Origin: Trichosphaerium sp. ATCC 40318
Taxonomy: Eukaryota > Protista > Tubulinea
DNA length: 36,662 nt
NCBI GenBank assembly: GCA_038496445.1
Contig: JALMLS010000475.1
Span: 1-36,662, forward strand
Direction: 5' to 3'
Positions 5,828 through 30,690 of the stretch are shown one piece after another (positions within the stretch are counted from its first letter, which is position 1; every line of letters begins with the position of its first letter). The position numbers and the translations under genes are program-made. The notes under the pieces were generated by a model. The model ran no database searches. It was given only the letters and a program-made list of their open reading frames with translations, and was not told the DNA's origin.

Positions 5828-5864
5828 TTCCTTGCAGTATCCTTTGTAACTATTTCCAAAAGAT

Positions 5865-8800
5865 ATGGCAACACGTTACTTTTCATTATTCGTTTTCGCG
5901 GTGATGGTATCCCTTCACCAATGCGCAGTACTTCATGTGGCCACCAACGGTAAGGATTAATTTAATTCCTTGTTCAGCAGAGGGTGTATTAACGGTACTA
6001 TTGTAGGTATAGATGATGGCGACTGTAGTCGTTTGAACCCATGTAAATCCTTGAGATATGCCTTGTTTTCTGAGGCGATATCTGATGACGTGATAAAGCT
6101 TAGCGCTGGAGTGTATGCGGGTACGACAGAACAGTTTTCAACAATTATTAAATAGTTTTGTTCAAGGCGACAACAATACCAAGCTCACGTGGGAACCGCT
6201 GAATCTGTCCAAAATTACGATTGAAGGTACGTTTATGGTTTTAGCTCAACGCACTAAATCACTAAGCTTTTGTTATTAAAACGTGTGATAGGAAGCGGTG
6301 ATTTAGAAACTATTATTGACGGTGAAGATACCAATTACTTTATGAATGTAACGACTTTTGGTACTAATATTACACTCTCAAACCTTGTAATTCAACAGAT
6401 GGAGTGTCCTCGGTTTAACGTACAACATACAATTACCGCTGAGTTTAACAATATTAAAACCCTCTTTAGTGTGACGACGACTATGATATCGCTTCGGTAG
6501 TTCAAATACGAGGTGGGCACGTTGACATTAGGTACAGCCTGCAAACAATTAAGCTCTTGTTTTTGTCTTTTTTGAGGAATTATTTGGTTTGAGTAGTTAC
6601 TGTTATTGTCTGTTTCATTCAAGTTTTGAGACAGACTGACTTTTAGCAAAAAAAATCCAGTTTCTGCCCGATCTGTCAGATCTGACGGATTTGACACAAA
6701 TTGTCATTTTTTTAAATGTGATCTACCCTCACGCCTGTCCAACCGTTTCAAACCCACGCGATTTAACAAACCCAGAGCAAACTTTTTATTTACATATTTG
6801 ACGCCTAGCGTTTACAAAGCCTACAGCAACGCTGGTGGTGTTTTGGGGCGGTTTTGACGTTGTTACACCTTCATTGCTGCTTGGATGCTACCATAGCGCT
6901 TCTGTTAGCGTGGGGTAGGCGCTAGCGTAGCGCTAGTAAGTTATACACGTACGTTGATTTTTTGAAGCAAAACATACAGCAAACAGTGTTTGAGGCATTC
7001 ATACCGTGTTTGGCGGTAATGCGATAGCTTTGTAGGACATCATACCTTTTTAATTCGCTTTTAGCGCATTGAACACCTCTGTGGTTTGATCGTACCGTGT
7101 ACAGTTGGCGTAGGTAAAATACTGCGATCATCTTCCATGGTCTGTTGAAACTTACATTGAAAATTTTGCTATCACTTACCGTAAGGTACCTAAGTCATAC
7201 AATGAAGGACAACATTGTAGCACAAATAGTTCACATTGTGATAGATCTACACCATTTGACAGAAGTGTCAGATCTTGCTAGATCTGCTAAAAGTGCTAAA
7301 AACTCACTTTCTAGAAAATATTAGTAAAACTTGAATGAGACAGACAATATTGCGTTTTTTCACGTGTATTTCTCGTAGAGACATTTTTTTTCATCCTACT
7401 CTAGTATCCATCACAATAAGTCTATTCTAACTGGTACTATTGTAGGGACTGTGTTTTTCGTCAAAACAAATGCGGCAACTGTACATACTTTCACACAAGC
7501 ATAGTACAAAATCAAGGAGGCTCCATGTTATTGAAAGGGTTGGAGGACATTTGAACTTGTAGTTTTACTGATAACTCTTTAGAGTACATTTTGAAGGAAA
7601 CTCAGCAAGTGTCAGCATTTTAAACTCTAGACTAGTTGTTGAAAATTCGACCTTCGAACATGGACACGCGTACAAAGGTGCCGCTTTCAAAACAAATTGT
7701 TGCTTACTGCTACAGGGTATATTTACGGGGAAGGAAAATTGAACGTGATTGTAAAGAATAGCAGCTTTTTATTTGGTTCAAATGGCTATGGAGGAGGCGT
7801 CTGTAGGTTACCACGTTTTTTTAGAGTTAATTGTGTCTAGCAATTATATCATCTCAAAGCCACATATCAACTGCGCACATTTCAGATTCTAAATTTACAA
7901 ACAACTTTGGTGGGACACTGGCGCTTGCTAATGTAGACGCCTCAATACAAGACTGCACTTTCAGGTAAAATAAATGAACGTACAGTGCTAATGCGATTGT
8001 AGTAATAACATTGCTGGTGGAGTTTACAGCCTTGGTGGCTATTTCTCAATGCAAGACTGCACTCTTAGGTAAAATAAATGATCTATAGCGCTGATGCAGT
8101 TGTAGTAATAACATCGCTCGAGTTGGAGTACTAACACTGCATATAAAAAATGCTAAAGTAGAAAATAACATATTCAAGAACAATACTGGATCAGGCACTA
8201 CCATATATTGCCATAATATACGCTGATAGAATCTAGCTATCTCAATCAATAGTGATTTTGCAAATGATTTAATAACTAACGGATATTTTAAAAACATTAC
8301 AGAAGTTTCAAACAATATGTTCGAAAATACCAATCCAGATGATTTTGATGACTTGTTCCCACAGATTACTGGAGGTACCTTTTTCTATTTGTAGCTGTAT
8401 TAATGACATATCACTCAGGTAATGCGTTTAGCACACTGCGTGTAGCACAGGTTTGGATCAAAGAGCAATCAGACACTGTTGAACATCTGGTCATAGAAAA
8501 CGGCTTTTTGAATTTTTCAAAGGATGGAGTGTTGGAAGTGTATTCGAGTTTTAATGCTGAAAGTGGACGAATTTATGTACTGTTGTTGAAACAAAAACAA
8601 TGCACTGTTTAACTCGTAAATTTAGGGAACGTCTTCTAACCTTGAGAAACAGCTCATACTCAAACGCAATTGCACCTCCTCAGTTACTGGCACAATGTTT
8701 GACTCCATAGGAATAGAAAACAAAGGTACATGTCTTAGTTGAAAGATCACGTGATTAACCTTATAAAAATAGGATCAATGAGCTTACATACTTTATTATT

Positions 8801-10672
8801 AAGTAGCATAATATATATTCCTCATACTACTATTGTTAACCTCGAATATGCTACTTTTAGAATTGCACCAGAGATGTTTGTTCATGGGCAAGAAAGTCAT
8901 TTGAAAATGCTTCAAAACTCGACATTAGTTGTTGAAGTAAGTGTATGGTTGTGTCAACTTGCTTACGGATGTGTAGGGACGTGTAGGTCTAAAATCTACA
9001 AATGTTATTATTAGCCCTCAAAGTAGGTTCAGTATTATTTTGGGCAAGTCTTATTTGGCCATCACTGAATCAAATATTACTATTCGTAAGTTTGTAATTG
9101 TTTACAGCCTTTCGATTAATGTGTGTTTAGTGGGTACACTGTTCATATCAATACCTGGTTCAACACATGTTCGACCGTTTGACATGTTCCCTTTGATTGA
9201 ATTCTCTCAAGGGTCAAGTGTTATATTCAATGGAACCATGGTTGTTGACCACCAGTACAGTACTTTTCCATTTTCGACAGCATTAGTGTTTTCAAATAGT
9301 TCCATGTCAATTCAGATGGTGGAAAGAGAACAAACCTTAAGAGTTTGGAGGTGGAGTGATGCTACAACTATAATAGGAATATCAGTTGGGTGCTTTGGAT
9401 TGCTTTTAACTCTGTTTGTAGTCACTGTTGTATTATACTTTTGGTATGTCATTTTCAACAACACTAACTAACGGTTGAATAGGAAATCTTCACCAATATT
9501 GAGGGCATCAACACCAGAACTACTTGTGGTTATCCTCGTTGGTATCTGCTTGTTGTATTGTGGCACAATTGTTTGGTATGGCAGTAGTACTATGAAGTTT
9601 GTCTACTAAAACTAACTCAATAAAGGACTGCTCCTATATCTGATGTTATCTGTGAGTTGCGGATATGGATTCCATTGATGGGATTTATTACTACTATGGC
9701 GTACGCTTTATTTCAGTACAACTACAATAGTTTGAACTACTAATCACAACTTTAAGGCCGCTTGTGGCGAAAACTTACAGAATTCACAGAATATTTAACA
9801 CCCTCAATAAATGTCCAACTCATGTTGTTGCAGTGCCTCTAATAGATGTGGTTAACCTAACAGCTGCATTAATTTGCGGTCAAATAGTATCCTTATGCCA
9901 TGCCATTGTTTGTTTTGTTACTTGTTTATCCTTAAACTTGGTAAGATTGCTTTAATTGTGTGGTCGGCAATGTCTCCAAACCGAATTGGTTACACACCAG
10001 ATCCAAACAATAGCAACTTTAAACTTGGACACTGTGAGAGTAGATATGCTAGTGTATTTTTGATTATCACTATCCTCTACAATGTACACACACTATTGGT
10101 ACTTTATTCTGCTTAACAATTGTGTAGGGAATAATATTGATTGTTGGTTCATATCTTGCATTCGCTGTCCGTAAGGCTCCAAGTATTTATAATGAATCAC
10201 GTTGGTTGGGAGCAGCTATTTATGATATGTTTGTATGGGCGCTGATACTTGTTGGTTTGGGATACGCCATCACGTCACCATCACTTCTCAAAAGTGTGAG
10301 TATTCTATTCTCAATTGCAATTTGGATAAGTACAACAGGTATAGCACAAACAACTTTGGACCTAATTACTAAATCTTGTTCTGTAGTGACTCTTGTTGTT
10401 ATCTTTGCGCCTAAGTTGTATGTCATTTTATTTGGCAATGACGTACCTCTCAGTTCTCAACAGTAAGTACACTATGTGCTCATTTATGAGCTAATGATGT
10501 TAGGCAACATTCGCTTGATTTCGGTGGTTTGAACATCCGCAAAGAACCTGATTTGAAGAAGAAAATTAAAAAACTGGAGGCCGAGAATCAAAGTTTACAA
10601 ACCGAAAACCTAAGTTTACAAACTGAAAATGAAAGCTTGCATGCTCGCCTTTCAACAAGTAATACCAATTGA
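5865..10672 (+). CDS. Class C (GABA-B/Grl-like) GPCR with N-terminal pectin-lyase/Pmp-like beta-helix ectodomain, copy 2 (~24 exons, roughly 900-950 aa)
   Basis: Manual splicing gives an open frame: signal peptide; VATNG-DDGDCSRLNPCKSLRYAL..DVIKLSAGVY; FxxN/GG repeats; 7TM motifs KSSPILRASTPELL, CELRIW..GF, AKTYRIHRIF, RKAPSIYNESR, IFAPK; coiled coil KIKKLEAENQSLQTENLSLQTENESL; TGA at 10670-10672. Confidence 0.88.
6606..7347. mobile_element. Non-autonomous TIR element (742 bp, TA target duplication; Tc1/mariner-type behaviour) inside intron 5 of copy 2
   Basis: 22-bp TIR TTGTCTGT(T/C)TCATTCAAGTTTT with one mismatch; TA at 6604-6605 and 7348-7349. The empty site tgtTAttgcg is present in copy 3 at ~19955-19964. 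Confidence 0.9.
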
Positions 10673-11144
10673 CATGTGATACATCCTCATTCTTTATTGT
10701 TTATTTAACAATTTGGTTATGAATAAACCTGTTAGTTTTGTCATATAGTTGCCTTAACCTGTTGATAGTCGCTAGATCTTGTTTGAAGCAAACTATTAAG
10801 ACTTGAACAATGCGACAGTCTCTGACTTTCGTTTTTCGCTCTAAAAACATTGTTATCTTCCCACACAAAGATTTAGAAACGTTTATAACTATGTACGTGC
10901 TTCTTTTGGTACGTGAATGCAGTAGCAAAATGCTTTGACTTGAGATGGCGCTACTTTACTTACAGGTTAGATCTGGTAAAATATTCTAGTCGTGATGCCA
11001 TTAAAAAAGCACTTATACAATTTTTACTGTAAACTTTGTCAATGACTAGGAGCAAGCATCACTTCCAAAAACATTAACATCATGATGTCAGCCCTAGAAC
11101 AGATAAAAAAACAAAAAGCTCTTTAAATATTTATTGTGTTTGAT

Positions 11145-13046: not shown

Positions 13047-13229
13047 GATATCAATTAGGGACGGTTTTTGTAAGCGGTTCACACCTTTCATATCAATGCT
13101 TTATCCTGTGTGAATGTACCTTTGGAATGAATGGCTCTATTGTTGTTAAGTTCTATATGTGGAATAAATTATTTACTTTTTTGGTGGTTAAGAACACATG
13201 GTGTCACAATAAATTTGTATGCGTTGTAC

Positions 13230-13342
13230 CTGTAAGAACTAACAGAAGTTGCAAGATCTGTCAGATCTGACTAAACACGAAAACCAAAAGTCACAAACAG
13301 CAAAAAGTTGCAAAGATTAGCAAACTTGAATGATACGGACAA
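13230..13342. mobile_element. Solo end of the TTGTC/TA TIR element family
   Basis: Subterminal agatctgtcagatctgac motif and caaacttgaatgatacggacaa-TA terminus. Confidence 0.7.
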
Positions 13343-13544: not shown

Positions 13545-13924
13545 GCGCAGCCAGAAATGAGTGTAACAGACGTCTATTACCAATAGAGCTTCAGCTAGAT
13601 ATTATGTGCCAGTTCGAGTGGAAACATGGTAAACAAGAAGGGTTCAAGTATTGGTATGACAATGGCCAATTATTCGAATAGTGTTATTCCATTAATGGTA
13701 AATTTGATGTAGAGTTTAAAGTTTGGCATAAGAACAGGGTATTGAATGAGTTGTGTTACTTTGTTAATGACAAAAAAGATGGAGAATACAAATGTTGGTA
13801 CAAAAATGGTCAATTGGAGGAGCAATACTACTTTGTCAATGGCATACGACATGGAGAATACAAGAGTTGGTTTGAAAATGGCCAACTGAAGGACCATTGC
13901 TATTTTATCAAACAACAAGATTAG
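13545..13924 (+). pseudogene. MORN-variant (YwqK-like) repeat protein, intronless, one internal TAG
   Basis: RLLPIELQLDIMCQFEWKHGKQEGFKYWYDNGQLFE*CYSINGKFDVEFKVWHKNRVLNELCYFVNDKKDGEYKCWYKNGQLEEQYYFVNGIRHGEYKSWFENGQLKDHCYF: four 24-aa GxYKxWYxNGQL repeats. Confidence 0.8.
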
Positions 13925-14187: not shown

Positions 14188-15770
14188 TTAGGGTTCATTG
14201 TCTTCTTTTTCTTCATCTGAACTATTTGTTATTTCTTCCTCCATTACCTTTCTTTTCCTCTTTCCTGTGCCTTCATTGTTATCGCTTTTACTCCTTCTAT
14301 CTCTGCAAATGGATCACAACCTGACCACCCTTCAAAATCACCCTCTTTTTACTTATTTTATGAATTTTTTTCTTATCAGCCTGGTTGATGTTATCACTGA
14401 CACCGAAGCCTGATAAGCTGCCAAAGCCAGGGCCTTGATTACTGCCAAAGATTCCAGAAGTATTAACAAAGCCACTACTGGTGTTACCAAAGCCACTAGA
14501 GCTACTATTACCGAAACCTAGCAGAAAAAAATATTAGTTGATACAAGCACCTTTACAAAAAAAAATCTCATATCCTTAGAGGACTGAAAGTAACACTAAA
14601 CGACAAGTGTGATACATGCTCCCTCCATGAATATAACTTTGTAGAGAGAAGTAAGGATAACAACAATCATGCTACCCCATCCTCGAGAGCTACCAAAAGA
14701 AGTGTTTCCAAATGATGAAGAGCCACCAAACATACCAGACGAGTTTCCAAAACCAGTGGTATTGCCAAAGCCGCTTGTATAACCAACTACAGAGCTTGTA
14801 GAGCCCATACCGTCCTCATTTTTCTGTAATTGGTAGTGTTCCCATCGCAGTTCTTCATGAGACTTTGTATTGAATTGTGGTGAGAAAGAGATGGATTGCA
14901 TGTTTACTTTTTGATTCATGTCTGTCCATTTAGTGTCTTTTTGAAATAAAAAATTACAAGAACCAAAGCAATAACAGCAAAAAAAAAAAAAAGGCAATGA
15001 CTTCAGACAAAATTTTAGCACTACTTAAGTACGAATGCGCATCACTAACAATCAGTTGGTTTGTTTACTCACTTAAGAACTTGGCTCCCTTGTGCCTCTT
15101 TTTCCATTGTTATCGCTGCCTCCCATCCACTGTTATAGTTGTTGAAGTAGCCAAAACTGCCTCCTGATTTATTAAAGCCACCTGAGCTGTTACCGCCAAA
15201 ATCAATGTTACTGTTATTGGTACCGGTCATGTTATTGCCTAAGATTGCAGAAAATTACTCAAAAAGGTCAAATACTCAATAAAAAAACACTTTTATGACA
15301 TTGTTGTTTTTAGGTAACTGTTTAAATGTGGGCATTCTTAATTGAATAAACAGGTACCTTTAGCTCCTCTCAAATACGCAGCTAGGTCATCTAATCCAAA
15401 GTAAAAAGCTTCTTGTACCATAGAGGATATGCCTATTGTACTAGGCACATCCAATATACCATCTCGGAGGTAATTCAATATGAACTCTACATGTGACAAA
15501 ATAAGAAAAAAGACGGAATAGCAGGAACCATACCAAATCGCTCTGGCGATCTATCAATAAACATGCCATCGCCGTCATCTTTAACTTCGTGTCTTCCAGA
15601 AAACGTAGCACCAAGCATGGAGTGCGGATATCTTGTGAGTGTTGACTTTGTCGTCTCGAACCTAGTTCAATAAATCATACGACGATCATGATTTTTTTGC
15701 AACTTTTAGTAATACCTTCTGCCACCAACGTTAAGAAAACGTTTTTTCTTGTGCTTGTTACAATTATGAC
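14188..15770 (-). CDS. KCTD/T1-type BTB domain fused to FG repeats and a Nup98-like GLEBS motif (start not found; possibly a pseudogene)
   Basis: Spliced LNVGGRRFETTKSTLTRYPHSMLGATFSG…FIDRSPERFEFILNYLRDG…EAFYFGL continues in frame into FG-rich sequence; MQSISFSPQFNTKSHEELRWEHYQ; many GFG/SFG repeats. One junction (~14945-15070) and the final stop (14297 or 14188) are unresolved. Confidence 0.75.
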
Positions 15771-15799
15771 GCCACTAATACCACAACATCTACAGGATG

Positions 15800-17827: not shown

Positions 17828-17869
17828 TACACAGTGCGTCTACATAAAATAATGTGATCGTCTTGCCAA

Positions 17870-18085
17870 GGTCTTTGAAACTTACATTAAAAATGTGTTT
17901 ATCACTTAAGGGTGTAAGTGTAAGTTGTACTATGATAGGCAGCATTGCGATTAATGGCACACAATAGTTCACATTGTGATAGATCTACACCATTTGACAA
18001 AAGTGTCAGACTTTGCTAGATCTGCTAAAAGTACTAGAAACTCACTTTCTAGAAAATATTAGTAAAACTTGAATGACATAGACAA
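17870..18085. mobile_element. Truncated copy of the right end of the 6606-7347 element
   Basis: High identity to 7140-7347, ending aaaacttgaatgacatagacaa-TA. Confidence 0.85.
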
Positions 18086-18189
18086 TAGTCCACTTTTAAC
18101 AACACTCTGAGCGCTGTTGGTTCTGATATGCAAACATGTTTGAAAACTGTGAGAAACTTTTCGAAAAAAATTCAGACTGTTATGTAATT

Positions 18190-18480
18190 AACACAAGTGC
18201 GCTGTAGTGTTTTAAGTACAAATATACGCGATATCAGTGTGCTATTGATAGCCACTAAGACGTTGTCTTGTCTCCCAAACAATCCGTACTAGTTGCCTAG
18301 CTGGCGCATGGTTATTCTAACAATGATATTTTTGTGTTTTTGAGAAGAGGACTTCCTGAAAGACTTGAACAATGCGACGTTGATTTAACAAGATACAATT
18401 GTATCCAACGTGATAGTGTATAATGTTGGATAATAATCTACAACTTTGAGAGACGTTAAATCGATCGGAACCATCCACAA
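18190..18480 (-). pseudogene. F-box/LRR gene fragment (copy of 4540-4825)
   Basis: Direct similarity to 4540-4825; joined to the upstream region by a deletion. Confidence 0.75.
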
Positions 18481-19218
18481 AACTCAAAAATCACATGAAG
18501 TTTAAACTAAGCCTTCAACGTTTACCAATATGCGTGTAGGTGCTACTCAAACCAAAGAAGAAGATAACACACTAAAAGGGAATAAAAAAGAGTACAAGCA
18601 TAAAGAAACTACCTTATATTAATAGCATAGTTGACTCAAACATTTACGTTTGCTGTGGTGTCAAAAACTGTTTGCCATGTTTTAGAAAAAATCATGTGTA
18701 ATTAAAAAACGCGTTAACTATTACTCCGACAAAACCAAACCGCGTAATGGTATGAATTGCGCGTACTTTAAACTTTTTTGAAAATAAATCTTGTAACATC
18801 TGACAAAGAATTTTCAAGTCACAAAAAGGTACATGCTGGTGACAGCTAATGTACAGTATAGTTTTAGGGCGTGTGATGACAATATCCTGCCAAGTCAGCA
18901 AGAGGTCCGCTGTTGTTGAAAGAAACAACCTCTAGGCAACCTCTTGTAACTACTGTACCAAAATTTTTGTTTATTGGAACAGTTTTTGTGCCCCACGAAA
19001 AGAATGAAATTTCTTACCTCAAACAGATATTTAATATTTTGTTTTCTTCTGGTATGTTATACATTATTTGAAAAGGCAGCATGCTTCGAACTATACTTCG
19101 AACAAAATATCGAACTGGTTCGAACCGTTTTTTGTGTATGTGAATACTAACGAAGTATTGTGTATCACAATTATTTTGCAGTGTTGTGCAGTATCCTTTG
19201 TAACTATTTCCAAAAGAT

Positions 19219-22200
19219 ATGGCAACACGTTACTTTCCATTATTCATATTAGCGGCAATGGTATCTCTTCACCAATGTGCAGTACTTCATGTGGCCACCA
19301 ACGGTAAGGATTAATTTAATTCCTTGTTCAGCAGAGGGTGTATTAACGGTACTATTGTAGGTATAGATGATGGCGACTGTAGTCGTTTGAACCCATGTAA
19401 ATCCTTGAGATATGCCTTGTTTTCTGAGGCGATATCTGATGACGTGATAAAGCTTGGCGCTGGAGTGTATGCGGGTACGACAGAACAGTTTTCAATAAGT
19501 ATTGAATAGTTTTGTACAAGGCTACAGTAATACCAACCTCACGTGGGGTGTTCTGAATCTGTCCAAAATTACGATTGAAGGTACGTTTATGGTTTTAGCT
19601 CAACGCACTAAATCACTAAGCTTTTGTTATTAAAACGCGTGGTAGGAAGCGGTGATTTAGAAACTATTATTGATGGTGTAGATACCAATTACTTTATGAA
19701 TGTAACGACTTTTGGTATTAATATTACACTCTCAAACCTTGTAATTCAACAGATGGCGTGTCCTCGGTTTAACGTACAACATACAATTACCGCTGAGTTT
19801 AACAATATTAAAACCCTCTTTAGTGTGACGACGACTATGATATCGCTTCGGTAGTTCAAATACGAGGTGGGCACGTTGACATTAGGTACAGCCTGCAAAC
19901 AATTAAGCTCTTGTTTTTGTCTTTTTTGAGGAATTATTTGGTTTGAGTAGTTACTGTTATTGCGTTTTTTCACGTGTATTTCTCGTAGAGACATTTTTTT
20001 TCATCCTACTCTAGTATCCATCACAATAAGTCTATTCTAACTGGTACTATTGTAGGGACTGTCTTTTTCGTCGAAACAAATGCCACAACTACAACGCATG
20101 TTACATACGAACTAGTAACATAATACAAAACCAAGGAGGCTCTATGTTACTGAAAGGGTAGGAGGATATTTGAACTTGTAGTTTTACTGATAACGCTTTA
20201 GAGTACATTTTGAAAGAAATTTAGGCAGCGTTAGCATTATCAACTCATCACTAGTTGTTGAAAGTTCAGTCTTCAAACATGGATCCCGAGGTGCCGCTTC
20301 CAAAACAAATTGTTGCTTACTGCTACAGGGTATATTTACGGGGAAGGAAAATTGAACGTGATTGTAAAGAATAGCAGCTTTTTATTTGGTTCAAGTGGCT
20401 ATGGAGGAGGCATCTGTAGGTTACCACGTTTTTTTAGAGTTAATTGTGTCTAGCAATTATATCATCTCAAAGCCACATATCAACTGCGCACATTTCAGAT
20501 TCTAAATTTACAAACAACTTTGGTGAGATACTGGTGCTTGCTAATGTAGACGCCTCAATACAAGACTGCACTTTCAGGTAAAATAAATGAACGTACAGTG
20601 CTAATGCGATTGTAGTAATAACATTGCTGGTGGAGTTTACAGCCTTGATGGCTATTTCTCAATGCGAGGCTGCACTCTTAGGTAAAATAAATGATCTATA
20701 GCGCTGATGCAGTTGTAGTAATAACATCGCTCGAGTTGGAGTACTAACACTGCATATAAAAAATGCTAAAGTAGAAAATAACATATTCAAGAACAATACT
20801 GGATCAGGCACTACCATATATTGCCATAATATACGCTGATAGAATCTAGCTATCTCAATCGATAGTGGTTTTGGAAATTACATAGAAACTAACGGATATT
20901 TTAAAAACATTACAGAAGTTTCAAACAATACGTTCGAAAATACCAATCCAGATGATTTTGATGACTTGTTCCCACAGATTACTGGAGGTACCTTTTTCTA
21001 TTTGTAGCTGTATTAATGACATATCACTCAGGTAATGCGTTTAGCACACTGCGTGTAGCACAGGTTTGGATCAAAGAGCAATCAGACACTGTTGAACATC
21101 TGGTCATAGAAAACGGCTTTTTGAATTTTTCAAAGGATGGAGTGTTGGAAGTGTATTCGAGTTTTAATGCTGAAAGTGGACGAATTTATGTACTGTTGTT
21201 GAAACAAAAACAATGCACTGTTTAACTCGTAAATTTAGGGAACGTCTTCTAACCTTGAGAAACAGCTCATACTCAAACGCAATTGCGCCTCCTCAGTTAC
21301 TGGCACAATATTTGACTCCATAGGAATAGAAAACAAAGGTACATGTCTTAGTTGAAAGATCACGTGATTAACCTTATAAAAATAGGATCAATGAGTTTAC
21401 ATACTTTATTATTAAGTAGCATAATATATATTCCTCATACTACTATTGTTAACCTCGAATATGCTACTTTTAGAATTGCACCAGAGATGTTTGTTCATGG
21501 GCAAGAAAGTCATTTGAAAATGCTTCAAAACTCGGCACTAGTTGTTGACGTAAGTGTATGGTTGTATCAACTTGCTTACGAATGTGTAGGGACGTGTAGG
21601 TCTAAAATCTACAAATGTTATTATTAGCCCTCAAAGTAGGTTCAGTATTATTTTGGGCAAGTCTTATTTGGCCATCACTGAATCAAATATTACTATTCGT
21701 AAGTTTGTAATTGTTTACAGCCTTTCGATTAATGTGTGTTTAGTGGGTACACTGTTCATATCAATACCTGCTTCAACACATGTTCGACCGTTTGACATGT
21801 TCCCTTTGATTGAATTCTCTCAAGGGTCAAGTGTTATATTCAATGGAACCATGGTTGTTGACCACCAGTACAGTACTTTTCCATTTTCGACAGCATTTGT
21901 ATTTTCAAATAGTTCTGTGTCAATTCAAATAATGGAAAGAGAACAAACCTTAAGAGTTTGGAGGTGGAGTGATGCTACAACTATAATAGGCATATCAATT
22001 GGGTGCTTTGGATTGCTTTTAACTCTGTTTGTAGTCACTGTTGTATTCTACTTTTGGTATGTTGTTAAAAAATCATATCTTCAAGAGCTCTATCTAACGG
22101 TTGAATAGGAAATCTTCACCAATATTGAGGGCATCAACACCAGAACTACTTGTGGTTATTCTCGTTGGTATCTGCTTGTTGTATTGTGGCACAATTGTTT

Positions 22201-23294
22201 GGTATGGCAGTAGTACTATGAAGTTTGTCTACTAAAACTAACTCAATAAAGGACTGCTCCTATATCTGATGTTATCTGTGAGTTGCGGATATGGATTCCA
22301 TTGATGGGATTTATTACTACTATGGCGTACGCTTTATTTCAGTACAAATACAATAGTTTGAACTACTAATCACAACTTTAAGGCCGCTTGTGGCGAAAAC
22401 TTACAGAATTCACAGAATATTTAACACCCTCAAGAAATGTCCAACTCATGTTGTTGCAGTGCCTCTAATAGATGTTATTAAACTAACAGCTGTATTAATT
22501 TGTGGTCAAATAGTATCCTTATGCCATGCCATTGTTTGTTTTGTTTTTGTTTATCCTTAAACTTGGTAAGATTGCTTTAATTGTGTGGTCGGCAATGTCT
22601 CAAAACCGAATTGGTTACACACCAGATCCAAACAATATCAACTTTAAACTTGCACACTGCGAGAGTAGATATGCTAGTGTATTTCTGATTATCACTATCC
22701 TCTACAATGTACACACACTATTGGTACTTTATTCTGCTTAACAATTGTGTAGGGAATAATATTGATTGTTGGTTCATATCTTGCATTCGCTGTCCGTAAG
22801 GCTCCAAGTATTTATAATGAATCACGTTGGTTGGGAGCAGCTATTTATGATATGTTTGTATGGGCGCTGATACTTGTTGGTTTGGGATACGCCATCACGT
22901 CACCATCACTTCTCAAAAGTGTGAGTATTCTATTCTCAATTGCAATTTGGATAAGTACAACAGGTATAGCACAAACAACTTTGGACCTAATTACTAAATC
23001 TTGTTCTGTAGTGACTCTTGTTGTTATCTTTGCGCCTAAGTTGTATGTCATTTTATTTGGCAATGACGTACCTCTCAGTTCTCAACAGTAAGTACACTAT
23101 GTGCTCATTTATGAGCTAATGATGTTAGGCAACATTCGCTTGATTTCGGTGCTTTGGACACCCTCAATGAGCCTGATTTGAAGAAAATTAAAAAACTGGA
23201 GGCCGAGAATCAAAGCTTACAAACTGAAAACCTAAGTTTACAAACTGAAAATGAAAGCTTGCATGCTCGCCTTTCAACAAGTAATACCAATTGA
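19219..23294 (+). CDS. Beta-helix ectodomain class C GPCR, copy 3 (apparently intact)
   Basis: Same exon structure as copy 2; ATG at 19219, TGA at 23292-23294; the divergent exons I translated stay in frame. Confidence 0.88.
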
Positions 23295-23779
23295 TATGTG
23301 ATACATCCTCATTCTTTATTGTTTATTTAACAATTTGGTTACGAATAAACCCTTTAGTTTTGTCATATAGTTGCCTTAACCTGTTGATAGTCGCTAGATC
23401 TTGTTTGAAGTAGATTATTAAGGTTCTTTTGCTCGGCAAGGTACAACTTCAGAAGAGGACTTCCTGAAAGACTTGAACAACGCGACGGTCTGACTTTCGT
23501 TTTTCGCTCCACAACACCTAATAACATTGTTATCTTCCCACACAAAGATTTAGAAACGTTTATAACTATGTAACAGCATGCATGTGCTTCTTTTTGGTGC
23601 GTGAATGCAGTAGCAAATACTTTGACTTGAGATGACGCTACTTTACTTAAGGGGCACACTGAGATGTGCAGAAATTGTTCAAATCGGCTCAAATTTTCGG
23701 GCCTATATCTTTGACATGAGGGCTTTTGAAAAACCCAACTTTTAGCGTGTGCCTTTTGACGTTTTTTTGTTGCAACAGT

Positions 23780-24480
23780 TTTTTTTTTCGAAAAATTCAG
23801 AAAGCCACTATCAATGACCAGATGTAACAGTGTCAGAATGCTCTTCAACCCAACTTGAAAACAGTAATAGGTGCAAGGCATTGCCAATAAAATACATTGG
23901 TTGTTTCGATATTGCTTATACAGCACCTCCCAAATTTGAAGCCTTGTTGCTAAAAAACAAGCAATTTGTCACATTTACTGCTCCATTGGCTCCGCTATTA
24001 ATTCCCGCTCTAAGTCCAGCTCCATTCTGTCCGATCTTATTTGTAAATGTACTATAGTATAAACTAACAGCGCTGTCAATGAGCTCCTCCTCGTCGAGAA
24101 ATTCCTGAAGGGTTTATGGCTGTATTATTGAAGAAGATTATATTGTTGCAAAGCACCTTCCCAGCGTCTGTGTATAACCCACCACCTGATGAGGCAGAAT
24201 TACCATCACTTTTCATCGCTATATTGGTACTATGTAGTCCACCTCCATAACCAGCGATATTATTACTACAAATACATAAGCGACACATACTCAATTTTTT
24301 ACCTGAAGTGCAGTTTTGTATCTCAATCTCCACATAAAGAAGCCTCACTCCCCACCATAAGATGTAGCTTTGTTGTGTGCGAATTTAGAACTTGAAATGT
24401 GCACAGTTGATTCGAGCCTTTGAGATGATTCAATTGGTAGAAACTATTAACTCTACAAATTCTTTCAACTTACCTATCAC
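23780..24480 (-). pseudogene. Fragment of a more divergent paralog of the receptor ectodomain
   Basis: SNNIAGYGGGL, GNSASSGGGLY, FFNNTA..RGGA, FFSNKASNLGGAV, then WVEEHSDTV/HLVIDSGFLNFSK matching WIKEQSDTVEHLVIENGFLNFSK; same ctgcacttcag|gtaaa…ttgtag|taataa intron; contains stops. Confidence 0.75.
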
Positions 24481-24509
24481 TTCTATTTCGAAAAAAATTC
24501 GTATCTTTC

Positions 24510-25020
24510 AAACTGTAATGTTATTCGCACAAGTGCGCTGTAGTGTTTTATGTACAAGTGTACACGACATCAGTGCGCTATTGATAGCCACTAAGACGTT
24601 GGCTTTCCTAGACATCAATCTTGATCCTGTTATGTTGTAGTTACATTGAAAGAATAGCGCTTGAACACCAGAAAGAAGAGAAAGATCTTTGTCTGTTGCT
24701 TCCGGGAAGGACAAAAAAGATATGATGGTTTGTGAGAAGAGGACTTCCTGAAAGACTTAAAAATGCGATGTCGATTTAACAAGATACCAACGTGATAGTG
24801 TATAATGTTGGATAATAATCTACAACTTTGAGAGACGTTAAATCGATCCACAAACTCAAGTAAATGAGCAAGTATCTCCCATTGGTACGTCTAACAACTC
24901 AATTGTCAATACTACTAGATTCGCTAATGCTGCGATGGTCCTCTGGCTTCCTTTCCGTTTATATTTACTGTTGCGATTTACATAATCACAGTAAGTTTGG
25001 CGCTCAGTGCTTCATGACAA
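24510..25020 (-). pseudogene. F-box/LRR gene fragment, third copy
   Basis: Similar to 4540-4992; retains an extra LRR, SFPEATDKDLSLLSGVQALFFQCNYNITGS. Confidence 0.75.
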
Positions 25021-25897
25021 ACCAATATTGGTTCAGCCAAAACATAAACAGTATTTGACTATATGGCGTTCCCTATATGCGTGTACAATGTTATTAACTT
25101 GGTACTGCCCCTCCTCACTTTAATTTCAAATTGTAAAAAACACAGAAAACAGTTTATACTACTTCTTATCGCATGCGGTAGCTGTCAGTACAGTTTCATT
25201 ACATAGTGATACGTTATGAATAATCCACATTTCAATTTTTGTAAAAAATCACATGAACATCTCAAAAATAAGCCTTCAACGTTTACCAATATGCGTGTAG
25301 GTGCTAACCAAAGAAGAAGATAACACACAAAAAGGGAATAAAAAAGGTTACGAGCGTAAAGAAACTACCTAATATTAATGCTAGCATAGTTGACTCGAAC
25401 GTTTACGGCAAACACTTTAGTGTGGAATAAAAATCACATGTGTATTAAAAAAAAACGCTTTAACTATTACTCTGACAAAACAAACCGCGTAATGGTATGA
25501 ATTGTACTTCAAACTTTTTTGAATAAATCTTATAGCTATCTGACAAAGAAGTTTCGAAAGTCACAAAAAGGTACATGGCACAGCTAAGCTGTACAACTAA
25601 TGTACACCATGTACCAATAAATTTTGGTGAACAATTATTTGCCCGCCACACGGGTTTTCTCACGAAAAGACTGAAATTTCTTACCTCAAAATAGATATTT
25701 AATATAAAAAGGTTGTTTGTTTTCTTCTGGTATGCTATACATTATTTGAAAGGCAGCATGGTTCGAACTATACTTCGAACAAAATATCGAACTGGTTCGA
25801 ACCGTTTTTTGTGTTTATGTGAATACTAACGAAGTATTGTGTATCACAATTATTTTGCAGTTTCTTGCAGTATCCTTTGTAACTATTTCCAAAAGAT

Positions 25898-28800
25898 ATG
25901 GCAACACGTTACTTTTCATTATTCGTATTAGCGGTAATGGTATCCCTTCACCAATGTGCAGTACTTCATGTGGCCACCAACGGTAAGGATTAATTTAATT
26001 CCTTGTTCAGCAGAGTGTATTAACGATACTATTGTAGGTACAGATGATGGCGACTGTAGTCGTTTGAACCCATGTAAATCCTTGAGATATGCTTTGTTTT
26101 CTGAGGCGATATCTGGTGACGTGATAAAGCTTGGCGCTGGAGTGTATGCGGGTACGACAGAATAGTTTTCAATAAGTATTGAATAGTTTTGTACAAGGCG
26201 GCAGTAATACCAACCTCACGTGGGGTGTTCTGAATCTGTCCAAAATTACGATTGAAGGTACGTTTATGGTTTTGCCTCAACGCACTAAATCATTAAGCTT
26301 TGTTATTAAAACACGTGGTAGGAAGTGGTACATTAAAAACTATTATTGACGGCGGAGATACCAATTACTTTATGAATATCCAGACGTTTGGTGGTGTTAA
26401 TATTACACTCTCAAACCTTACAATTCAACAGATGGCGTGTCCTCAGTTTAAAGTACAACATACAATTAACGCTGAGTTTAACAATATTAAAACTCCACTT
26501 TAGTGTAACGATGGCAGTGATATCGCTTCAGTACTTACAACACGAGGTGGGCATGTTGACGTTAGGTACAGCCTGCAAAAGCTGCAAATTATTGAGGGTT
26601 TAGTATTGGGGGTTTTTTTTATCAAAACACGTGGCTTTATTCGTAGCAAACCTACGCCTGCTCTTGTAGGTTTCTTAGGGCTACCATGGTAACCCTTCAC
26701 TCATGTTTTTTAATGTGTTCGCTTTGCCGATATTGTTTTTTCTTTTTTGGGAATTATTTGGTTTGAGTAGCTACTGTTATTTTGTTCACGTATATCTCTC
26801 GTCGCTACCTTCTTTTTCATCCTCTAGTATCCATTACTATTCTAACTGGTCTATTGTAGGGACTGTATTTTTCGTCAAAACAAATGCGGCAACTGTACAT
26901 ACACTACATACTTTTACACAAAAAGCCCTATAAGTATAATACAGAATCAAGGAGGCTCTATGTTATTGAAAGGGTAGGAGGACATTTGAACTTGTAGTTT
27001 TACTGATAACTCTTTAGAGTACATTTTGAAGGAAACTCAGCAAGTGTCAGCATTTTAAACTCTAGACTAGTTGTTGAAAATTCGACCTTCGAACATGGAC
27101 ACACGTCCAAAGGTGCCGCTTTCAAAACAAATTGTTGCTGACGGTTGCAGGGCAAATTTATGGCGATGGAACAGTCAATGTGATTGTAAAGAATAGCAGC
27201 TTTTTATTTGGTTCAGCATATGAAGGTGGAGGAATCGGTAGGTTTACCACGTTTTGTTGGAGCTAATTGTTCTAGCAATTAAATCATCTGATGAATCAAC
27301 AGTACACATTTCAGGCTCTAAATTTACAAACAACCAAGCTACATCCTTTGGTGGGGCAGTATCGCTTACTTATGGGGACATCTTAATACAAGACTGCACT
27401 TTCAGGTAAATAAATGAGTGTAGAAAAATAATGAATGAATAGCACTTATGCAGTTGTAGTAATAACATCGCTCATACTGAAGGTGGCGGATTATTCAGCA
27501 GTGTTAGCAATTTCTCAATGAAAGGCTGCACTTTCAGGTAAATAAAAGAGTTTAGAAAATAATGAATGAATAGCACTTATGCAGTTGTAGTAATAACACC
27601 GCTATTGTTAGTGGTGGTGGATTATCCAGTTGGTTTAGTAGCAGTTTCTCAATTAAAGACTGCACTTTCAGGTAAATAAATGAGTGTAAAAAAATAATGA
27701 ATGAATAGCACTTATGCAGTTGTAGTAATAACACCGCTAGTGGTAGTGGTGGTGGATTATCCAGTCGGTTTAGTAACAGTTTCTCAATGAAAGGCTGCAC
27801 TTTCAGGTAAATAAATGAGTGTAAAAAAATAATGAATGAATAGCACTTATGCAGTTGTAGTAATAACACCGCTATTGGTAGTGGTGGTGGATTATTCAGC
27901 AGTTATAGCAATTTCTCAATGAAAGGCTGCACTTTCAGGTAAATAAAAGAGTTTAGAAAATAATGAATGAATAGCACTTATGCAGTTGTAGTAATAACAC
28001 CGCTAGTGGTGGTGGTGGATTAATCAACGAGTATGGCAATTTCTCAACACAAGGCTGCACTTTCAGGTAAACTAATGTGTATAGAAAAAATGAATGAATA
28101 GCTAATGCAGCTGTAGTAATAACATCGCTGATGATAGAGGTGGTGCACTAAGGCTGATAACAAGTAATGTTACAGTAGAAAATAACTTATTCAAGAACAA
28201 TACTGTATCAGGTACTACCATATATATACCATAATATACGCTGATAGAATCTAGCTATCTCAATTAATATCATACCTGGAAATACTAGAATAAATTATGG
28301 TTATTTAAAAAACACTACAGTATCAAACAACACATTCGAAAATACCAATCCAGATGATTTTGATGGCTTGTTCCCACAGATTACTGGAGGTACCTTTTTC
28401 TATTTGTAGCTGTGTTAATGACATATTGTTCAGGTAATGTATTTAGCACATTGCGTATGCCACTGTTTTCAAATTGGATCAAAGAGCAATCAGACACTGT
28501 CGAACATCTGGTAATTGAAAACGGCTTTCTGAATTTTTCGAAGGATGGAGTGTTGGAAGTGTATTCGAGTTTTAATGCTGAAAGTGGACGAATTTATGTA
28601 CAGCGTTCAAACAAAAACGACACGCTGTTTAATCCTTGTAAATTTAGGGAATGTCTTCTAACCTCGAGAAACAGCTCATACTCAAACAGAATTGCACCTC
28701 CTCAGTTTCTGGCATGATAATAGATTCCATAGGAATAGAAAACAAAGGTACATGTCTTAGTTGAAAGGTCACGTGATTAACCTTGTAAAATAGGATCAAT

Positions 28801-30690
28801 GAGCATACATAGTTTATTATTAAGTAGCACAATCTATATCCCTCATACTACTATTGTTACCCTCGAATATGGCACTTTGCGAATTGCACAGGAGATATTT
28901 ATTCATGGGCAAGAAAGTAGTTTGAAAATGCTTCAACACTCGACATTAGCTGTTGACGTAAGTATATTTTAGCTTGCTAAATAACAAATAACTAATAGGG
29001 ACGTGCAAGACTAAAATCTACAGATATTTTTGTTAGCTCTCAAAGTAGGTTCAATATTACACTGGGCAAGTCTTATTTGGCCATCACTGAATCAAATATT
29101 GCTATTCGTAAGTTTGTGATTGTTTACAGCCTTTGATTTATTTTGTTTAGTGGGTACACTGTTCGTATCAATACCTTCAACACAATTTCAACTGTTTGAC
29201 TTGGTCCCTTTGATTGAATTCTCTCAAGGGTCAAGTGTTATATTTAATGGAACCATGATTGTTGACCACAGCACTACTTTTCCATTTTCGACTGCATTAG
29301 TGTTTTCAAATAGTTCCATGTCAATTCAGATTGTAGAAAGAGAACGAACCTTAAGGGTTTGGAGGTGGAGTGATGCTACGACTATAATAGGAATATCAGT
29401 TGGGTGCTTTGGATTGCTTTTAACTCTGTCTGTAGTCACTGTTGTATTATACTTTTGGTATGTCATTAAAATCGTATTTTCTCAACAACACTAACTAACG
29501 TTTGAATAGGAAATCTTCACCAATATTGAGGGCATCAACACCAGAACTACTTGTGGTTATTCTCGTTGGTATCTGCTTGTTGTATTGTGGCACAATTGTT
29601 TGGTATGGCAGTAGTACTATGGAGTTTGTCTACTAAAATTAACACATTAAAGGAGTGCTCCTATATCTGATGTTATCTGTGAGTTGCGGATATGGATTCC
29701 ATTGATGGGATTTATTACTACTATGGCGTACGCTTTATTTCAGTACAACTACAATATGTTTGAACTACTAACCACAACTTTAAGGCCGCTTGTGGCGAAA
29801 ACTTACAGAATTCACAGAATATTTAACACCCTCAAGAAATGTCCAACTCATGTTGTTGCAGTGCCTCTAATAGATGTTGTTAAACTAACAGCTGGATTAA
29901 TAAGCGGTCAAATAGTATCATTATGCCTTGATTTTGTTTGTTTCGCTTTTGTTACTTTTGTTTATCCTTAAACTTGTTAAGGTTGCTTTAATTATGTGGT
30001 CAGTAATGTCTCCAAACCGGCTCAGGCACACAACAGATCCAGGCGATAGCAGCTTTCAAGTTGCGCACTGCAAGAGTAGATATGCTAGCGTATTTCTGAT
30101 TATCACTATTGTCTATAATGTACGCAAGCCATTGGTACTTCATTCTATTAAACAATTGTGGTAGGGAATAATATTGATTGTTGGTTCATATCTTGCGTTT
30201 GCAGTCCGTAAGGCTCCAAGTATTTATAATGAATCACGTTGGTTGGGAGCAGCTATTTATGATATGTTTGTATGGGCGCTGATACTTGTTGGTTTGGGAT
30301 ACGCCATTACGTCACTATCACTTCTCAGGAGTGTCAGTATTCTTTTCTCAGTTGCAATTTGGATAAGTACAACAGGTACATCACAAACAACTTTGAACGT
30401 AATTACTAAATCTTGTCTTTTAGTGACTCTTGCTGTTATCTTTGCGCCAAAGTTGTATGTCATTTTCTTTGGCAATGACGTACCTCTCAGGTCTCAACAG
30501 TACGTACTTTGTGTGTACTCATTTGTGAGTTAATGACGTTAGGCAACATTCGCTTGATTTAGGTGCTTTTGACAGCCGCAAAGAACCTGATTTGAAGAAG
30601 AAGATTAAAAAACTGGAGGTTGAAAATCACAGTTTACAAACTGAAATTCAAAGCTTGCACGCTCGCCTTTCAACTAGTAGTACCAATTGA
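25898..30690 (+). CDS. Beta-helix ectodomain class C GPCR, copy 4, with four extra beta-helix exons (apparently intact)
   Basis: ATG at 25898, TGA at 30688-30690; canonical FTNNQATSFGGAV repeat; ectodomain exons in frame; coiled coil one heptad shorter than in copies 2/3. Confidence 0.88.
27390..28130 (+). repeat. Tandem array of ~130-bp intron+exon units (6 introns, 5 full cassette exons)
   Basis: Introns at 27406-27459, 27538-27590, 27672-27725, 27807-27860, 27939-27991 and 28067-28117; exons of 78, 81, 81, 78 and 75 nt, all phase 2-2. Confidence 0.92.

What the first reader, a model, noticed from the sequence alone, without database searches (positions are those of the whole stretch)
5865..30690. 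Tandem family of class C GPCRs with a diversifying beta-helix ectodomain: candidate variable recognition-receptor system
Seen: four paralogs plus fragments, with a nearly invariant 7TM/coiled-coil part and differences concentrated in a Pmp/pectin-lyase-like ectodomain (in-frame indels, substitution patches, repeat-number change). Established: animal class C GPCRs use Venus-flytrap ectodomains, and FxxN/GGA(I/V) motifs define Pmp-type right-handed beta-helices. Inference: a constant signalling module coupled to a variable solenoid could be a prey, pathogen or self/non-self sensing repertoire. I cannot confirm that this architecture is unreported.
Basis: partly seen in the sequence, partly recalled or inferred. 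Interest (0 to 1): 0.85.

Follow-up and report, generated by a model that had tools for sequence, protein, structure and literature searches.

The report
Amoeba GPCR cluster with beta-helix ectodomains

Summary
Three intact paralogs lie on the + strand: A 5865-10672 (958 aa, 24 exons), B 19219-23294 (958 aa) and C 25898-30690 (1071 aa, 28 exons). An inverted fourth copy D (2009 to 1) runs off the window and has frameshifts. There are three fragments.

Each gene encodes a signal peptide, a Pmp/PbH1-type beta-helix ectodomain, a 7tm_3 domain with the PKxY motif, and a cytoplasmic leucine zipper. cDNA contigs confirm ten GT..AG introns and carry A-, B- and C-specific variants, so the copies are transcribed.

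The closest full-length relative, from the amoebozoan Trichosphaerium, has Beta_helix + 7tm_3 + coiled coil. A metagenome contig holds two tandem colinear copies.

The "diversifying" reading is only partly supported.
- Ectodomains are more divergent (77-91% aa identity against 89-97% for 7TM). All coding indels are in frame, and C has five one-rung exons where A and B have one.
- But dN/dS is 0.55-0.75 in the ectodomain against 0.41-0.48 in the 7TM, below 1 and not clearly different.
- Identity between copies is mosaic, which points to gene conversion.

The architecture is not unreported: about 30% of class C GPCRs of anaerobic gut fungi carry pectin-lyase-fold ectodomains (PMC5168858). The scan has noted the same family on other pieces of this genome. 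Exon centres diverge more than the tiny introns between them; this is unexplained.

The parts
5865..10672 (+). Copy A: 24-exon gene, 958 aa, intact (signal peptide, beta-helix ectodomain, 7TM, leucine zipper)
   Evidence: Model. Ten introns are confirmed by GT..AG joints in cDNA contigs; contigs of X1 match with 0 differences.
5865..9363 (+). Copy A signal peptide plus ectodomain (exons 1-17a). Pmp/PbH1-type rungs lie in exons 4-12; exons 12-17 form a membrane-proximal beta-rich part with no Pfam match.
   Evidence: Beta_helix E 0.016 for 8095-8223. tblastn of P0002 onto exon 4, C's rung exons and exon 17. FxxN/GG motifs.
9364..10433 (+). Copy A seven-transmembrane domain (exons 17b-23), class C type with K..RI..IF after TM3 and PKLY at the end of TM7
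   Evidence: 7tm_3 hits. Colinear with P0002 residues 787-1133. Sequence reading.
10565..10651 (+). Copy A cytoplasmic leucine zipper: Leu every 7 residues over four heptads, Asn at three 'a' positions. It is one heptad shorter in C.
   Evidence: Translation of exon 24. P0002 and P0156 also end in coiled coils.
6608..7348 (.). About 740-nt element with terminal inverted repeats, inserted in intron 5 of copy A only. It makes that intron 914 nt (170 nt in B, 294 nt in C).
   Evidence: Minus-strand spliced contigs lie over it.
7480..7510 (+). Length-variable loop of exon 6. The exon product differs in length in all four copies (31/34/38/30 aa) and is always in frame.
8195..8236 (+). GC-AG intron in A (also in B and D); the same intron is GT-AG in C (28212-28254)
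   Evidence: A 1-nt indel in C inside it shows it is non-coding.
19219..23294 (+). Copy B: 24 exons, 958 aa, intact
   Evidence: B-specific variants appear in cDNA contigs of run X3.
25898..30690 (+). Copy C: 28 exons, 1071 aa, intact
   Evidence: C-specific variants appear in cDNA contigs.
27406..28116 (+). Copy C array of five one-rung exons (27460-27537, 27591-27671, 27726-27806, 27861-27938, 27992-28066). The exons are phase-symmetric and are separated by 50-54-nt introns.
1..2009 (-). Copy D, head-to-head with A and cut by the window start. Exons 1-7 are intact; exons 8-12 have about 10 frameshifting indels, all within the first 700 nt of the window.
3049..3272 (-). Fragment of exons 23-24 (end of TM7 plus degraded zipper) of a further minus-strand copy
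3795..3968 (+). Fragment of exon 22 (TM5-TM6), 77% aa identity to A
23786..24384 (-). Fragment of a divergent family member's ectodomain: Pmp repeats plus an exon-13-like piece
   Evidence: Chlam_PMP E 3.9e-5, 23.9 bits. Exon-13 match.

Best explanation
Shown here. This is a local cluster of transcribed paralogous genes for a lineage-specific, probably amoebozoan, family of class C (family 3) GPCRs.

Each protein has four parts:
- a signal peptide;
- an extracellular region of about 590 aa built from Pmp/PbH1-type right-handed beta-helix rungs, followed by a beta-rich membrane-proximal part, in place of the Venus flytrap;
- a GABA-B-like 7TM domain;
- a cytoplasmic leucine zipper.

The genes have 24-28 small exons and introns of 37-67 nt. 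In part of the ectodomain one exon encodes one rung.

The copies evolve in four ways:
- duplication, both tandem and inverted;
- gain and loss of rung exons;
- in-frame indels in loops;
- frequent gene conversion or recombination between paralogs, which gives mosaic ectodomains.

Overall selection is purifying but relaxed (dN/dS about 0.4-0.75).

Inferred. The receptors act as zipper-stabilised dimers, like other class C receptors. The beta-helix binds an extracellular ligand. A polysaccharide or glycan-bearing surface, for example of prey microbes or the substrate, is most likely, by analogy with lyases, epimerases, tailspikes and adhesins of this fold. Binding is passed through the membrane-proximal part to the 7TM domain and a heterotrimeric G protein. 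The paralogs then offer a germline-encoded set of related binding surfaces. Nothing indicates somatic mixing of exons.
For: - Gene models are intact in three copies.
- Spliced cDNA contigs give ten GT..AG joints. One run carries the SMART oligo at contig ends. A-, B- and C-specific variants appear in cDNA contigs.
- Single exons match 7tm_3 at or near the gathering score. The PKLY and K..RI..IF motifs are present.
- Among 1.84 billion representatives only 36 proteins match the TM5-7 exon at E<=1e-3. The best full-length one is P0002 from Trichosphaerium sp. (Amoebozoa). It has Beta_helix E 3e-39, a weak Chlam_PMP match, 7tm_3 E 8e-46 and a C-terminal coiled coil. It is colinear with the window's exons 3-4, the rung exons and exons 17-23.
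- P0156 has Chlam_PMP + 7tm_3 + a zipper.
- Metagenome contig L002 carries two tandem colinear copies.
- The AlphaFold model of P0002:1-860 has pLDDT 85-98 over residues 80-565, with three strands per rung. Its Foldseek matches are PL6 alginate lyases, GH110, mannuronan epimerases, the PfbA adhesin, pertactin and tailspikes.
- dN/dS values and tests are.
- Mosaic identity is shown. A=B at 0% while A-C is 25% at 6450-6599. A is about equal to C and D (0.7-2.7%) while A-B is 15% at 7501-7650. A and B share identical runs of 466 and 355 nt despite about 4% mean divergence.
Against: - No ligand, G-protein coupling or dimerisation was tested.
- The window's own ectodomain exons reach only sub-threshold Pfam scores (Beta_helix 15.2 bits, Chlam_PMP 18.7 bits). 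The fold assignment leans on homolog P0002 and on motifs.
- The membrane-proximal 300 aa have no recognised fold. The model there has pLDDT below 50, and atlas hits scored 0.83 or lower.
- The joined protein was neither searched nor folded.
- Exon centres diverge more than the adjacent introns, even at synonymous sites. Simple relaxed purifying selection plus tract-wise conversion does not predict this.
Confidence: 0.62

Rival explanations
1. Selection-driven recognition repertoire. The beta-helix faces and loops are under diversifying selection. Conversion and rung-exon turnover are retained because they create new specificities for prey, pathogens or kin.
For: - Differences, in-frame indels and rung-number change sit in the ectodomain.
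- The exon-6 loop differs in length in all four copies.
- Exon centres of the C array diverge 25% while their introns diverge 3.4%.
- The three most recent rung pairs show about 25 non-synonymous against about 2 synonymous changes (p about 0.07).
- A-B ectodomain exons diverge 4.7% against 1.3% for the introns.
- The same family occurs on several other pieces of the genome.
Against: - Ectodomain-wide dN/dS is 0.55-0.75, significantly below 1 in two of three pairs and not clearly above the 7TM value.
- pS is also high in the variable exons, which amino-acid selection does not explain.
- Only three sequences were available, so no site test was possible. Variable sites could not be mapped on a model of the window's own protein.
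Confidence: 0.2
2. Adhesion or mechanosensing receptor. The beta-helix works as a rigid adhesin-like stalk, as in Pmp, pertactin or PfbA, that anchors the cell to substrate or prey. Signalling follows attachment rather than binding of a soluble ligand.
For: - Repeat motifs and Pfam hits are of the Pmp adhesin type.
- Foldseek lists PfbA and pertactin.
- Atlas leads for the membrane-proximal part are autotransporter-passenger-like (scores 0.83 or lower, a lead only).
Against: - There is no GAIN/autoproteolysis or other adhesion-GPCR feature.
- The same fold is equally typical of polysaccharide-binding enzymes.
- No experiment bears on it.
Confidence: 0.13
3. Decaying or artefactual copies. On this reading the array is a product of assembly duplication or of pseudogenes without function.
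For: Copy D has many frameshifts, and three fragments exist.
Against: - A, B and C keep ORFs of 958-1071 codons across 24-28 exons, with all splice sites intact.
- All their indels are in frame.
- dN/dS is below 1.
- Independent cDNA contigs carry copy-specific variants.
- The flanks differ between copies.
Confidence: 0.03

Closest known systems
Class C GPCRs of anaerobic gut fungi with a pectin-lyase-fold / parallel beta-helix N-terminal domain (Seppala et al. 2016, PMC5168858)
   Same: A class C 7TM domain is preceded by a long extracellular pectin-lyase-fold/PbH1 region instead of the ANF/Venus flytrap domain. There is no nine-cysteine domain. Both are large multigene families. Carbohydrate sensing has been proposed.
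   Different: The host lineage differs (fungi against a probable amoebozoan). Homology between the two sets was not tested here, so the fusions may be independent. The fungal report does not describe a C-terminal zipper, one-rung exons, tandem clusters or conversion.
P0002 (Trichosphaerium sp. ATCC 40318, MMETSP0405 transcript), P0156 (MMETSP transcript) and the two genes on metagenome contig L002
   Same: They have the same three-part architecture. They are colinear in sequence, including the N-terminal cap (GxYAG...ITIEG), the juxtamembrane WRRW/WRW motif, the 7TM and the coiled-coil tail. L002 shares the exon order and the tandem arrangement.
   Different: Identity is only 31-51% in the parts that align. 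P0002 has many more rungs (Beta_helix matches over residues 254-560). None of them is characterised.
GABA-B-type and Dictyostelium Grl family 3 receptors
   Same: They share the 7tm_3 fold, the lack of the cysteine-rich linker and, for GABA-B (my own knowledge), a cytoplasmic coiled coil used for dimerisation. The next-best 7TM matches are ANF_receptor + 7tm_3 proteins.
   Different: Their ectodomain is a periplasmic-binding-protein-like flytrap (ANF or BMP), not a beta-helix (PMC10445921).
Chlamydial polymorphic membrane proteins and other autotransporter passengers
   Same: They share the repeat motif (FxxN, GG[AILV]) and the right-handed beta-helix rod. Pmps are also a paralogous, variable family.
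   Different: Pmps are anchored by a beta-barrel translocator in a bacterial outer membrane. Here the rod is fused to a eukaryotic 7TM domain.
Germline or somatically diversified recognition receptors (VLR, Dscam, plant NLR clusters)
   Same: A variable repeat solenoid is joined to a constant signalling part. Evolution is by duplication, unequal exchange and conversion in clusters, as in NLR clusters.
   Different: There is no evidence of somatic assembly or mutually exclusive splicing, and no demonstrated positive selection.

Membership tests
Class C (family 3) GPCR, Pfam 7tm_3 | Match to the 7tm_3 profile at or above the gathering score | tested here: met
   Exon 10128-10337 scores 34.2 bits (cut-off 33.5). 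Exon 9472-9606 scores 24.6 bits, E 2.4e-5. The colinear homolog P0002 scores 157 bits.
Class C (family 3) GPCR, Pfam 7tm_3 | Seven hydrophobic helices with class C motifs (K..RI..IF after TM3, W in TM6, PKxY at the end of TM7) | tested here: met
   Read from the exon translations: AKTYRIHRIF, MFVWAL, FAPKLY. Aligns without gaps to P0002 TM1-TM7 once intron 10339-10386 is removed.
Class C (family 3) GPCR, Pfam 7tm_3 | Venus flytrap (ANF_receptor / PBP type I) ligand-binding domain | tested here: not met
   No ANF_receptor or Peripla_BP hit on any ectodomain exon scanned. P0002 and P0156 lack it too. This domain is typical of the class but is not required by the 7tm_3 definition.
Class C (family 3) GPCR, Pfam 7tm_3 | Nine-cysteine linker (NCD3G) | tested here: not met
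   No hit. The juxtamembrane exon 17 has no cysteine cluster. GABA-B-type receptors also lack it (PMC5168858).
Right-handed parallel beta-helix (Pfam Beta_helix / PbH1; Chlam_PMP repeats) | Profile match above the curated cut-off | tested here: inconclusive
   Window exons reach only Beta_helix 15.2 bits (cut-off 25.9) and Chlam_PMP 18.7 bits (cut-off 20.6). Single exons are 20-54 aa, and the joined protein was not scanned. The neighbouring fragment 24079-24384(-) passes Chlam_PMP (23.9 bits). Homologs P0002 (134.5 bits) and P0156 (23.0 bits) pass.
Right-handed parallel beta-helix (Pfam Beta_helix / PbH1; Chlam_PMP repeats) | Three-stranded rungs stacked into a rod in a structure or confident model | tested here: met
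   Met for homolog P0002 only. pLDDT is 85-98 over residues 80-565. Foldseek top matches are beta-helix lyases, epimerases, adhesins and tailspikes. The window's own protein was not modelled.
Autotransporter / Pmp family | C-terminal beta-barrel translocator domain | tested here: not met
   The C-terminal half is a 7tm_3 domain plus a coiled coil.
Somatically diversified receptor (Dscam- or VLR-like) | Mutually exclusive or combinatorial use of cassette exons in transcripts, or DNA rearrangement | not tested
   The single read-laying run covered copy A only. There the lone rung exon is flanked by intron 7965-8002, confirmed by a cDNA joint, and by the modelled intron 8069-8105. An earlier follow-up on another array of this genome found no mixing.
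Family under diversifying selection | dN/dS above 1 in the ligand-binding part, or a significant excess over the signalling part | tested here: not met
   Ectodomain 0.55-0.75 and 7TM 0.41-0.48; Fisher p 0.35, 0.045 and 0.33. For rung exons alone pN/pS is 0.95, and recent pairs are suggestive only (p about 0.07).

The most novel reading that the evidence does not exclude
The beta-helix GPCR clusters of this amoeba are a germline-encoded recognition repertoire. Short templated patches and rung-exon turnover, guided by near-identical mini-introns and conserved exon ends, keep replacing the solvent-exposed centres of the rungs. Selection keeps the variants. This would be a unicellular analogue of solenoid-based immune or allorecognition receptors, wired to G proteins.
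Probability: 0.17. Interest if true: 0.8.

Novelty: new member of a known kind. Interest (0 to 1): 0.45.

Why it matters
It adds a second eukaryotic lineage in which class C GPCRs carry a beta-helix rather than a flytrap. That bears on how freely ligand-binding modules were swapped onto the class C 7TM core.

The family is compact and transcribed. It has a conserved cytoplasmic zipper. Its exon layout (one rung per exon, tiny introns) makes domain length easy to change.

If the ectodomains bind microbial or substrate glycans, they are candidates for how amoebae sense prey or surfaces. If the exon-centre variability proves to be selected, the family would be a simple model for the evolution of a receptor repertoire.

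Tried and rejected
- A minimal-intron dynamic-programming gene finder mis-placed several introns. I corrected them by hand from cDNA joints, paralog indels and homology.
- Two first-pass model errors were fixed later. Intron 2 is 6121-6166, not 6113-6155 (P0002 has GTYAGSNN). An in-frame, stop-free intron at 10339-10386 had been read as coding. All phmmer hits stopped at query residue 72 or so, and a cDNA contig ends at 10338 with 6 loose letters.
- As a result, the one representative search used a query with 16 intron-encoded residues at its end. This lowered its scores somewhat.
- I considered a ciliate-type genetic code for the in-frame stop at 9469. I rejected it because a 39-nt GT..AG intron is confirmed there.
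- I considered the shared TGA TAG at 8224-8229 as a common nonsense mutation. I rejected it in favour of a GC-AG intron, which is GT-AG in C and holds a 1-nt indel.
- Rfam and tRNA scans of the window found nothing.
- The Atlas feature search for the membrane-proximal part gave only scores of 0.83 or lower.
- The search for homologous proteins with the 7TM region of P0002 returned only three proteins. The relation to the gut-fungal receptors could therefore not be tested.
- The eLife 2025 GPCR survey (PMC12716839) does not mention beta-helix ectodomains.
- The look-up of sequencing runs gave coded organisms only, so the species was not identified.
Full report
**What is there.** The window is eukaryotic DNA of 37% G+C with very short introns. 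Self-comparison shows three direct copies and one inverted copy of a unit of about 5 kb, at 80-96% identity.

**Gene models.** I built the models exon by exon.
- cDNA-derived contigs from two public runs gave ten GT..AG joints in copy A. Contigs of X1 match with no differences, and contigs of X3 carry the SMART template-switch oligo as loose ends.
- The remaining introns were placed from reading frames, from indels between paralogs that are not multiples of three, and from homology.
- Copy A (5865-10672) has 24 exons and encodes 958 aa. B (19219-23294) has the same structure and length. C (25898-30690) has 28 exons and encodes 1071 aa.
- All three are free of internal stops and keep every splice site.
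- Introns are 37-67 nt, except intron 5. It is 170 nt in B, 294 nt in C and 914 nt in A. In A it has taken up an element of about 740 nt with terminal inverted repeats.
- One intron is GC-AG in A, B and D and GT-AG in C.

**Copy D and fragments.**
- D is head-to-head with A on the minus strand (ATG at 2009) and is cut by the window start.
- Its exons 1-7 are intact. Exons 8-12 carry about ten frameshifting indels against about twenty substitutions, all within the first 700 nt of the window.
- That ratio fits either a young pseudogene or poor sequence near an assembly end. I cannot tell which.
- Fragments of further copies lie at 3049-3272(-), 3795-3968(+) and 23786-24384(-).

**Expression.**
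- Spliced contigs cover exons 9-22 of A.
- The variant letters in the X3 contigs coincide with B-specific and C-specific bases at many places: for B at 7913, 7916, 7922, 8674, 9285-9319, 9851, 9977 and 10013; for C at 9342, 9366, 10016, 10029, 10053, 10160 and 10430.
- A few variants match neither copy, which points to further paralogs.
- So A-, B- and C-type mRNAs exist. Contigs cannot give expression levels.

**What the protein is.** The N-terminus (MATRYFSLFVFAVMVSLHQCA...) looks like a signal peptide.

The C-terminal third is a class C 7TM domain.
- Single exons match Pfam 7tm_3 at 34.2 bits (cut-off 33.5) and 24.6 bits.
- The class C hallmarks AKTYRIHRIF (after TM3) and FAPKLY (end of TM7) are present.

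The tail holds a leucine zipper. Leu recurs every seventh residue over four heptads, with Asn at three 'a' positions. C lacks exactly one heptad.

The ectodomain exons carry the repeat ...C-T-F | S | N-N-(I/T)-A-x-x-G-G-G..., with the motif split across exon junctions. On their own they reach only sub-threshold Pfam scores: Beta_helix 15.2 bits and Chlam_PMP 18.7 bits.

**Relatives.** A full HMMER pass over 1.84 billion representative proteins, with the TM5-7 exon as query, found only 36 proteins at E<=1e-3.
- The best full-length hit is P0002, a transcript of the amoebozoan Trichosphaerium sp. ATCC 40318. It has Beta_helix (E 3e-39, five stretches), a weak Chlam_PMP match, 7tm_3 (E 8e-46) and a C-terminal coiled coil.
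- P0002 is colinear with the window's genes. Shared parts are the N-terminal cap (GxYAG...ITIEG.G...IDGE.T.Y), the rungs, the juxtamembrane WR(R)W motif and all seven helices.
- The other long hits that I scanned are ordinary ANF_receptor + 7tm_3 receptors.
- A second MMETSP protein, P0156, has Chlam_PMP + 7tm_3 + a zipper.
- Metagenome contig L002 (7.2 kb, 42% G+C) holds one complete and one partial copy in tandem, with the same exon order.
- The family is therefore older than this genome, and its tandem habit recurs.

**Fold.**
- The ectodomain of P0002 finds hundreds of bacterial and some eukaryotic Pmp/PbH1 repeat proteins. Their alignment gives the classic consensus FxxNxAxxxGGGxY...CxF.
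- An AlphaFold model of P0002:1-860 is confident (pLDDT 85-98) over residues 80-565, with three strands per rung.
- Foldseek against the PDB returns PL6 alginate lyases, GH110, mannuronan C-5 epimerases, the PfbA adhesin, pertactin and phage tailspikes.
- The membrane-proximal 300 residues are not modelled with confidence. Atlas leads there (autotransporter-passenger-like) score 0.83 or lower and are leads only.
- The fold assignment for the window's own product therefore rests on homology and motifs.

**How the copies differ.**
- Amino-acid identity is 91/79/77% (A-B/A-C/B-C) in the ectodomain, 97/90/89% in the 7TM and 91/79/79% in the tail.
- Every indel inside coding exons is in frame. The exon-6 loop after the conserved C.F..N.CG has a different length in each of the four copies.
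- C has five one-rung exons where A and B have one.
- Nei-Gojobori dN/dS is 0.75/0.66/0.55 for the ectodomain and 0.47/0.41/0.48 for the 7TM. The Fisher test of the two parts gives p 0.35, 0.045 and 0.33. The ectodomain is significantly below neutrality in two pairs.
- dS itself is about half as large in the 7TM part.
- The nearest neighbour of each copy changes along the gene. A=B and C is about equal to D at 6450-6599. A, C and D are about equal, with B 13-15% away, at 7501-7650. B is about equal to C at 6150-6299.
- A and B share identical runs of 466 and 355 nt despite about 4% mean divergence.
- The cluster is thus being reshuffled by gene conversion or unequal exchange. The 'constant' module is partly a product of homogenisation.

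**An unexplained pattern.**
- In the C array the five 53-54-nt introns differ by 3.4% on average, while the exons differ by 16.6%, and by 25% in their centres.
- For these exons pS is 0.18 and pN is 0.17. The three most recent exon pairs show about 25 non-synonymous and about 2 synonymous changes (p about 0.07; the pairs are not independent).
- Between A and B, ectodomain exons differ by 4.7% and the introns by 1.3%.
- In the A-C and B-C comparisons, exons and introns are equally divergent.
- High synonymous divergence beside near-identical introns is not what amino-acid selection alone predicts. It is also not what tract-wise conversion predicts.
- Short templated patches from unsampled paralogs, homogenisation of introns and exon ends, or splicing constraint on mini-introns are all possible.

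**Mechanism.** The architecture, transcription and mode of evolution are shown. What follows is inferred.
- Dimerisation through the zipper, as class C receptors are dimers and GABA-B uses a coiled coil (my own knowledge).
- Ligand capture by the beta-helix, most probably a polysaccharide or a glycan-bearing surface given the fold's relatives.
- Signalling through a G protein.

**Comparison with the literature.**
- Seppala et al. (PMC5168858) reported about 100 class C GPCRs in three anaerobic gut fungi. None has an ANF domain. About 30% have a pectin-lyase fold with parallel beta-helix repeats, and the authors proposed carbohydrate sensing.
- The survey of amoebozoan GPCRs (PMC10445921) counts 37 family 3 receptors in Physarum. 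It lists 'PbH1' among the domain labels of its figures but does not discuss it in the text.
- The architecture is therefore known. This is a further member of that kind, in another lineage, with extra features: the zipper, the rung exons and the mosaic cluster.
- Whether the fungal and amoebozoan fusions share an origin was not tested.

**Earlier notes of this scan.** They describe the same family on other pieces of this genome and call the organism an amoeba. I confirmed the one-rung-per-exon layout and the exon-6 loop on this window. The organism label is consistent with the amoebozoan nearest relative but was not verified.

**Verdict.** The finding is a real, unusual and well-defined receptor family. 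It is not a new kind of system. The diversifying-repertoire idea is neither shown nor excluded.

Noticed in passing
window 6608-7348 (relative at 17845-18087): A non-autonomous DNA-transposon-like element of about 740 nt with terminal inverted repeats of about 24 nt (TATTGTCTGTYTCATTCAAGTTTT). It sits in intron 5 of copy A only. Contigs with minus-strand CT..AC joints (6887/6953, 7042/7093) lie over it in runs labelled as other organisms, as expected for a repeat family.
   Followed up: partly
window 4678-5004(-), 18320-18490(-), 24633-24890(-): An ORF with a weak F-box match (E 0.012) recurs about 1 kb upstream of copies A, B and C. The duplicated unit therefore includes this upstream segment.
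   Followed up: partly
window 10565-10651, 23187-23273, 30604-30669: The cytoplasmic leucine zipper has Asn at three successive 'a' positions. C is exactly one heptad shorter. This could set pairing specificity between paralogs.
   Followed up: no
window 13682-13921(+): An exon with MORN_2 repeats (E 2.3e-10) lies between copies A and B, so the receptor array is interrupted by unrelated genes. A BTB/FG gene at 14188-15770 was noted by another reader.
   Followed up: no
window 31351-36603(-): A long multi-exon minus-strand gene downstream of copy C has a single TM segment (IISAVIGALIFIAAAIYCC) followed by an acidic stretch. It was not identified.
   Followed up: no
L002:1262-4938 and 5412-7163: A metagenome contig (ENA ERZ25070917, 42% G+C) holds two tandem genes of the same family with the same exon order. 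It comes from a different, unidentified eukaryote.
   Followed up: partly
window 3021-3970: Two receptor fragments in opposite orientation (exons 23-24 on the minus strand, exon 22 on the plus strand) lie between the head-to-head copies D and A. They look like the scar of an inversion or breakage within exon 22.
   Followed up: no
window 8941-8985: A cDNA contig of run X3 skips 40 nt near intron 8937-8976, at a position that gives no GT..AG on copy A. It carries six other differences, so it probably comes from an unsampled paralog.
   Followed up: no
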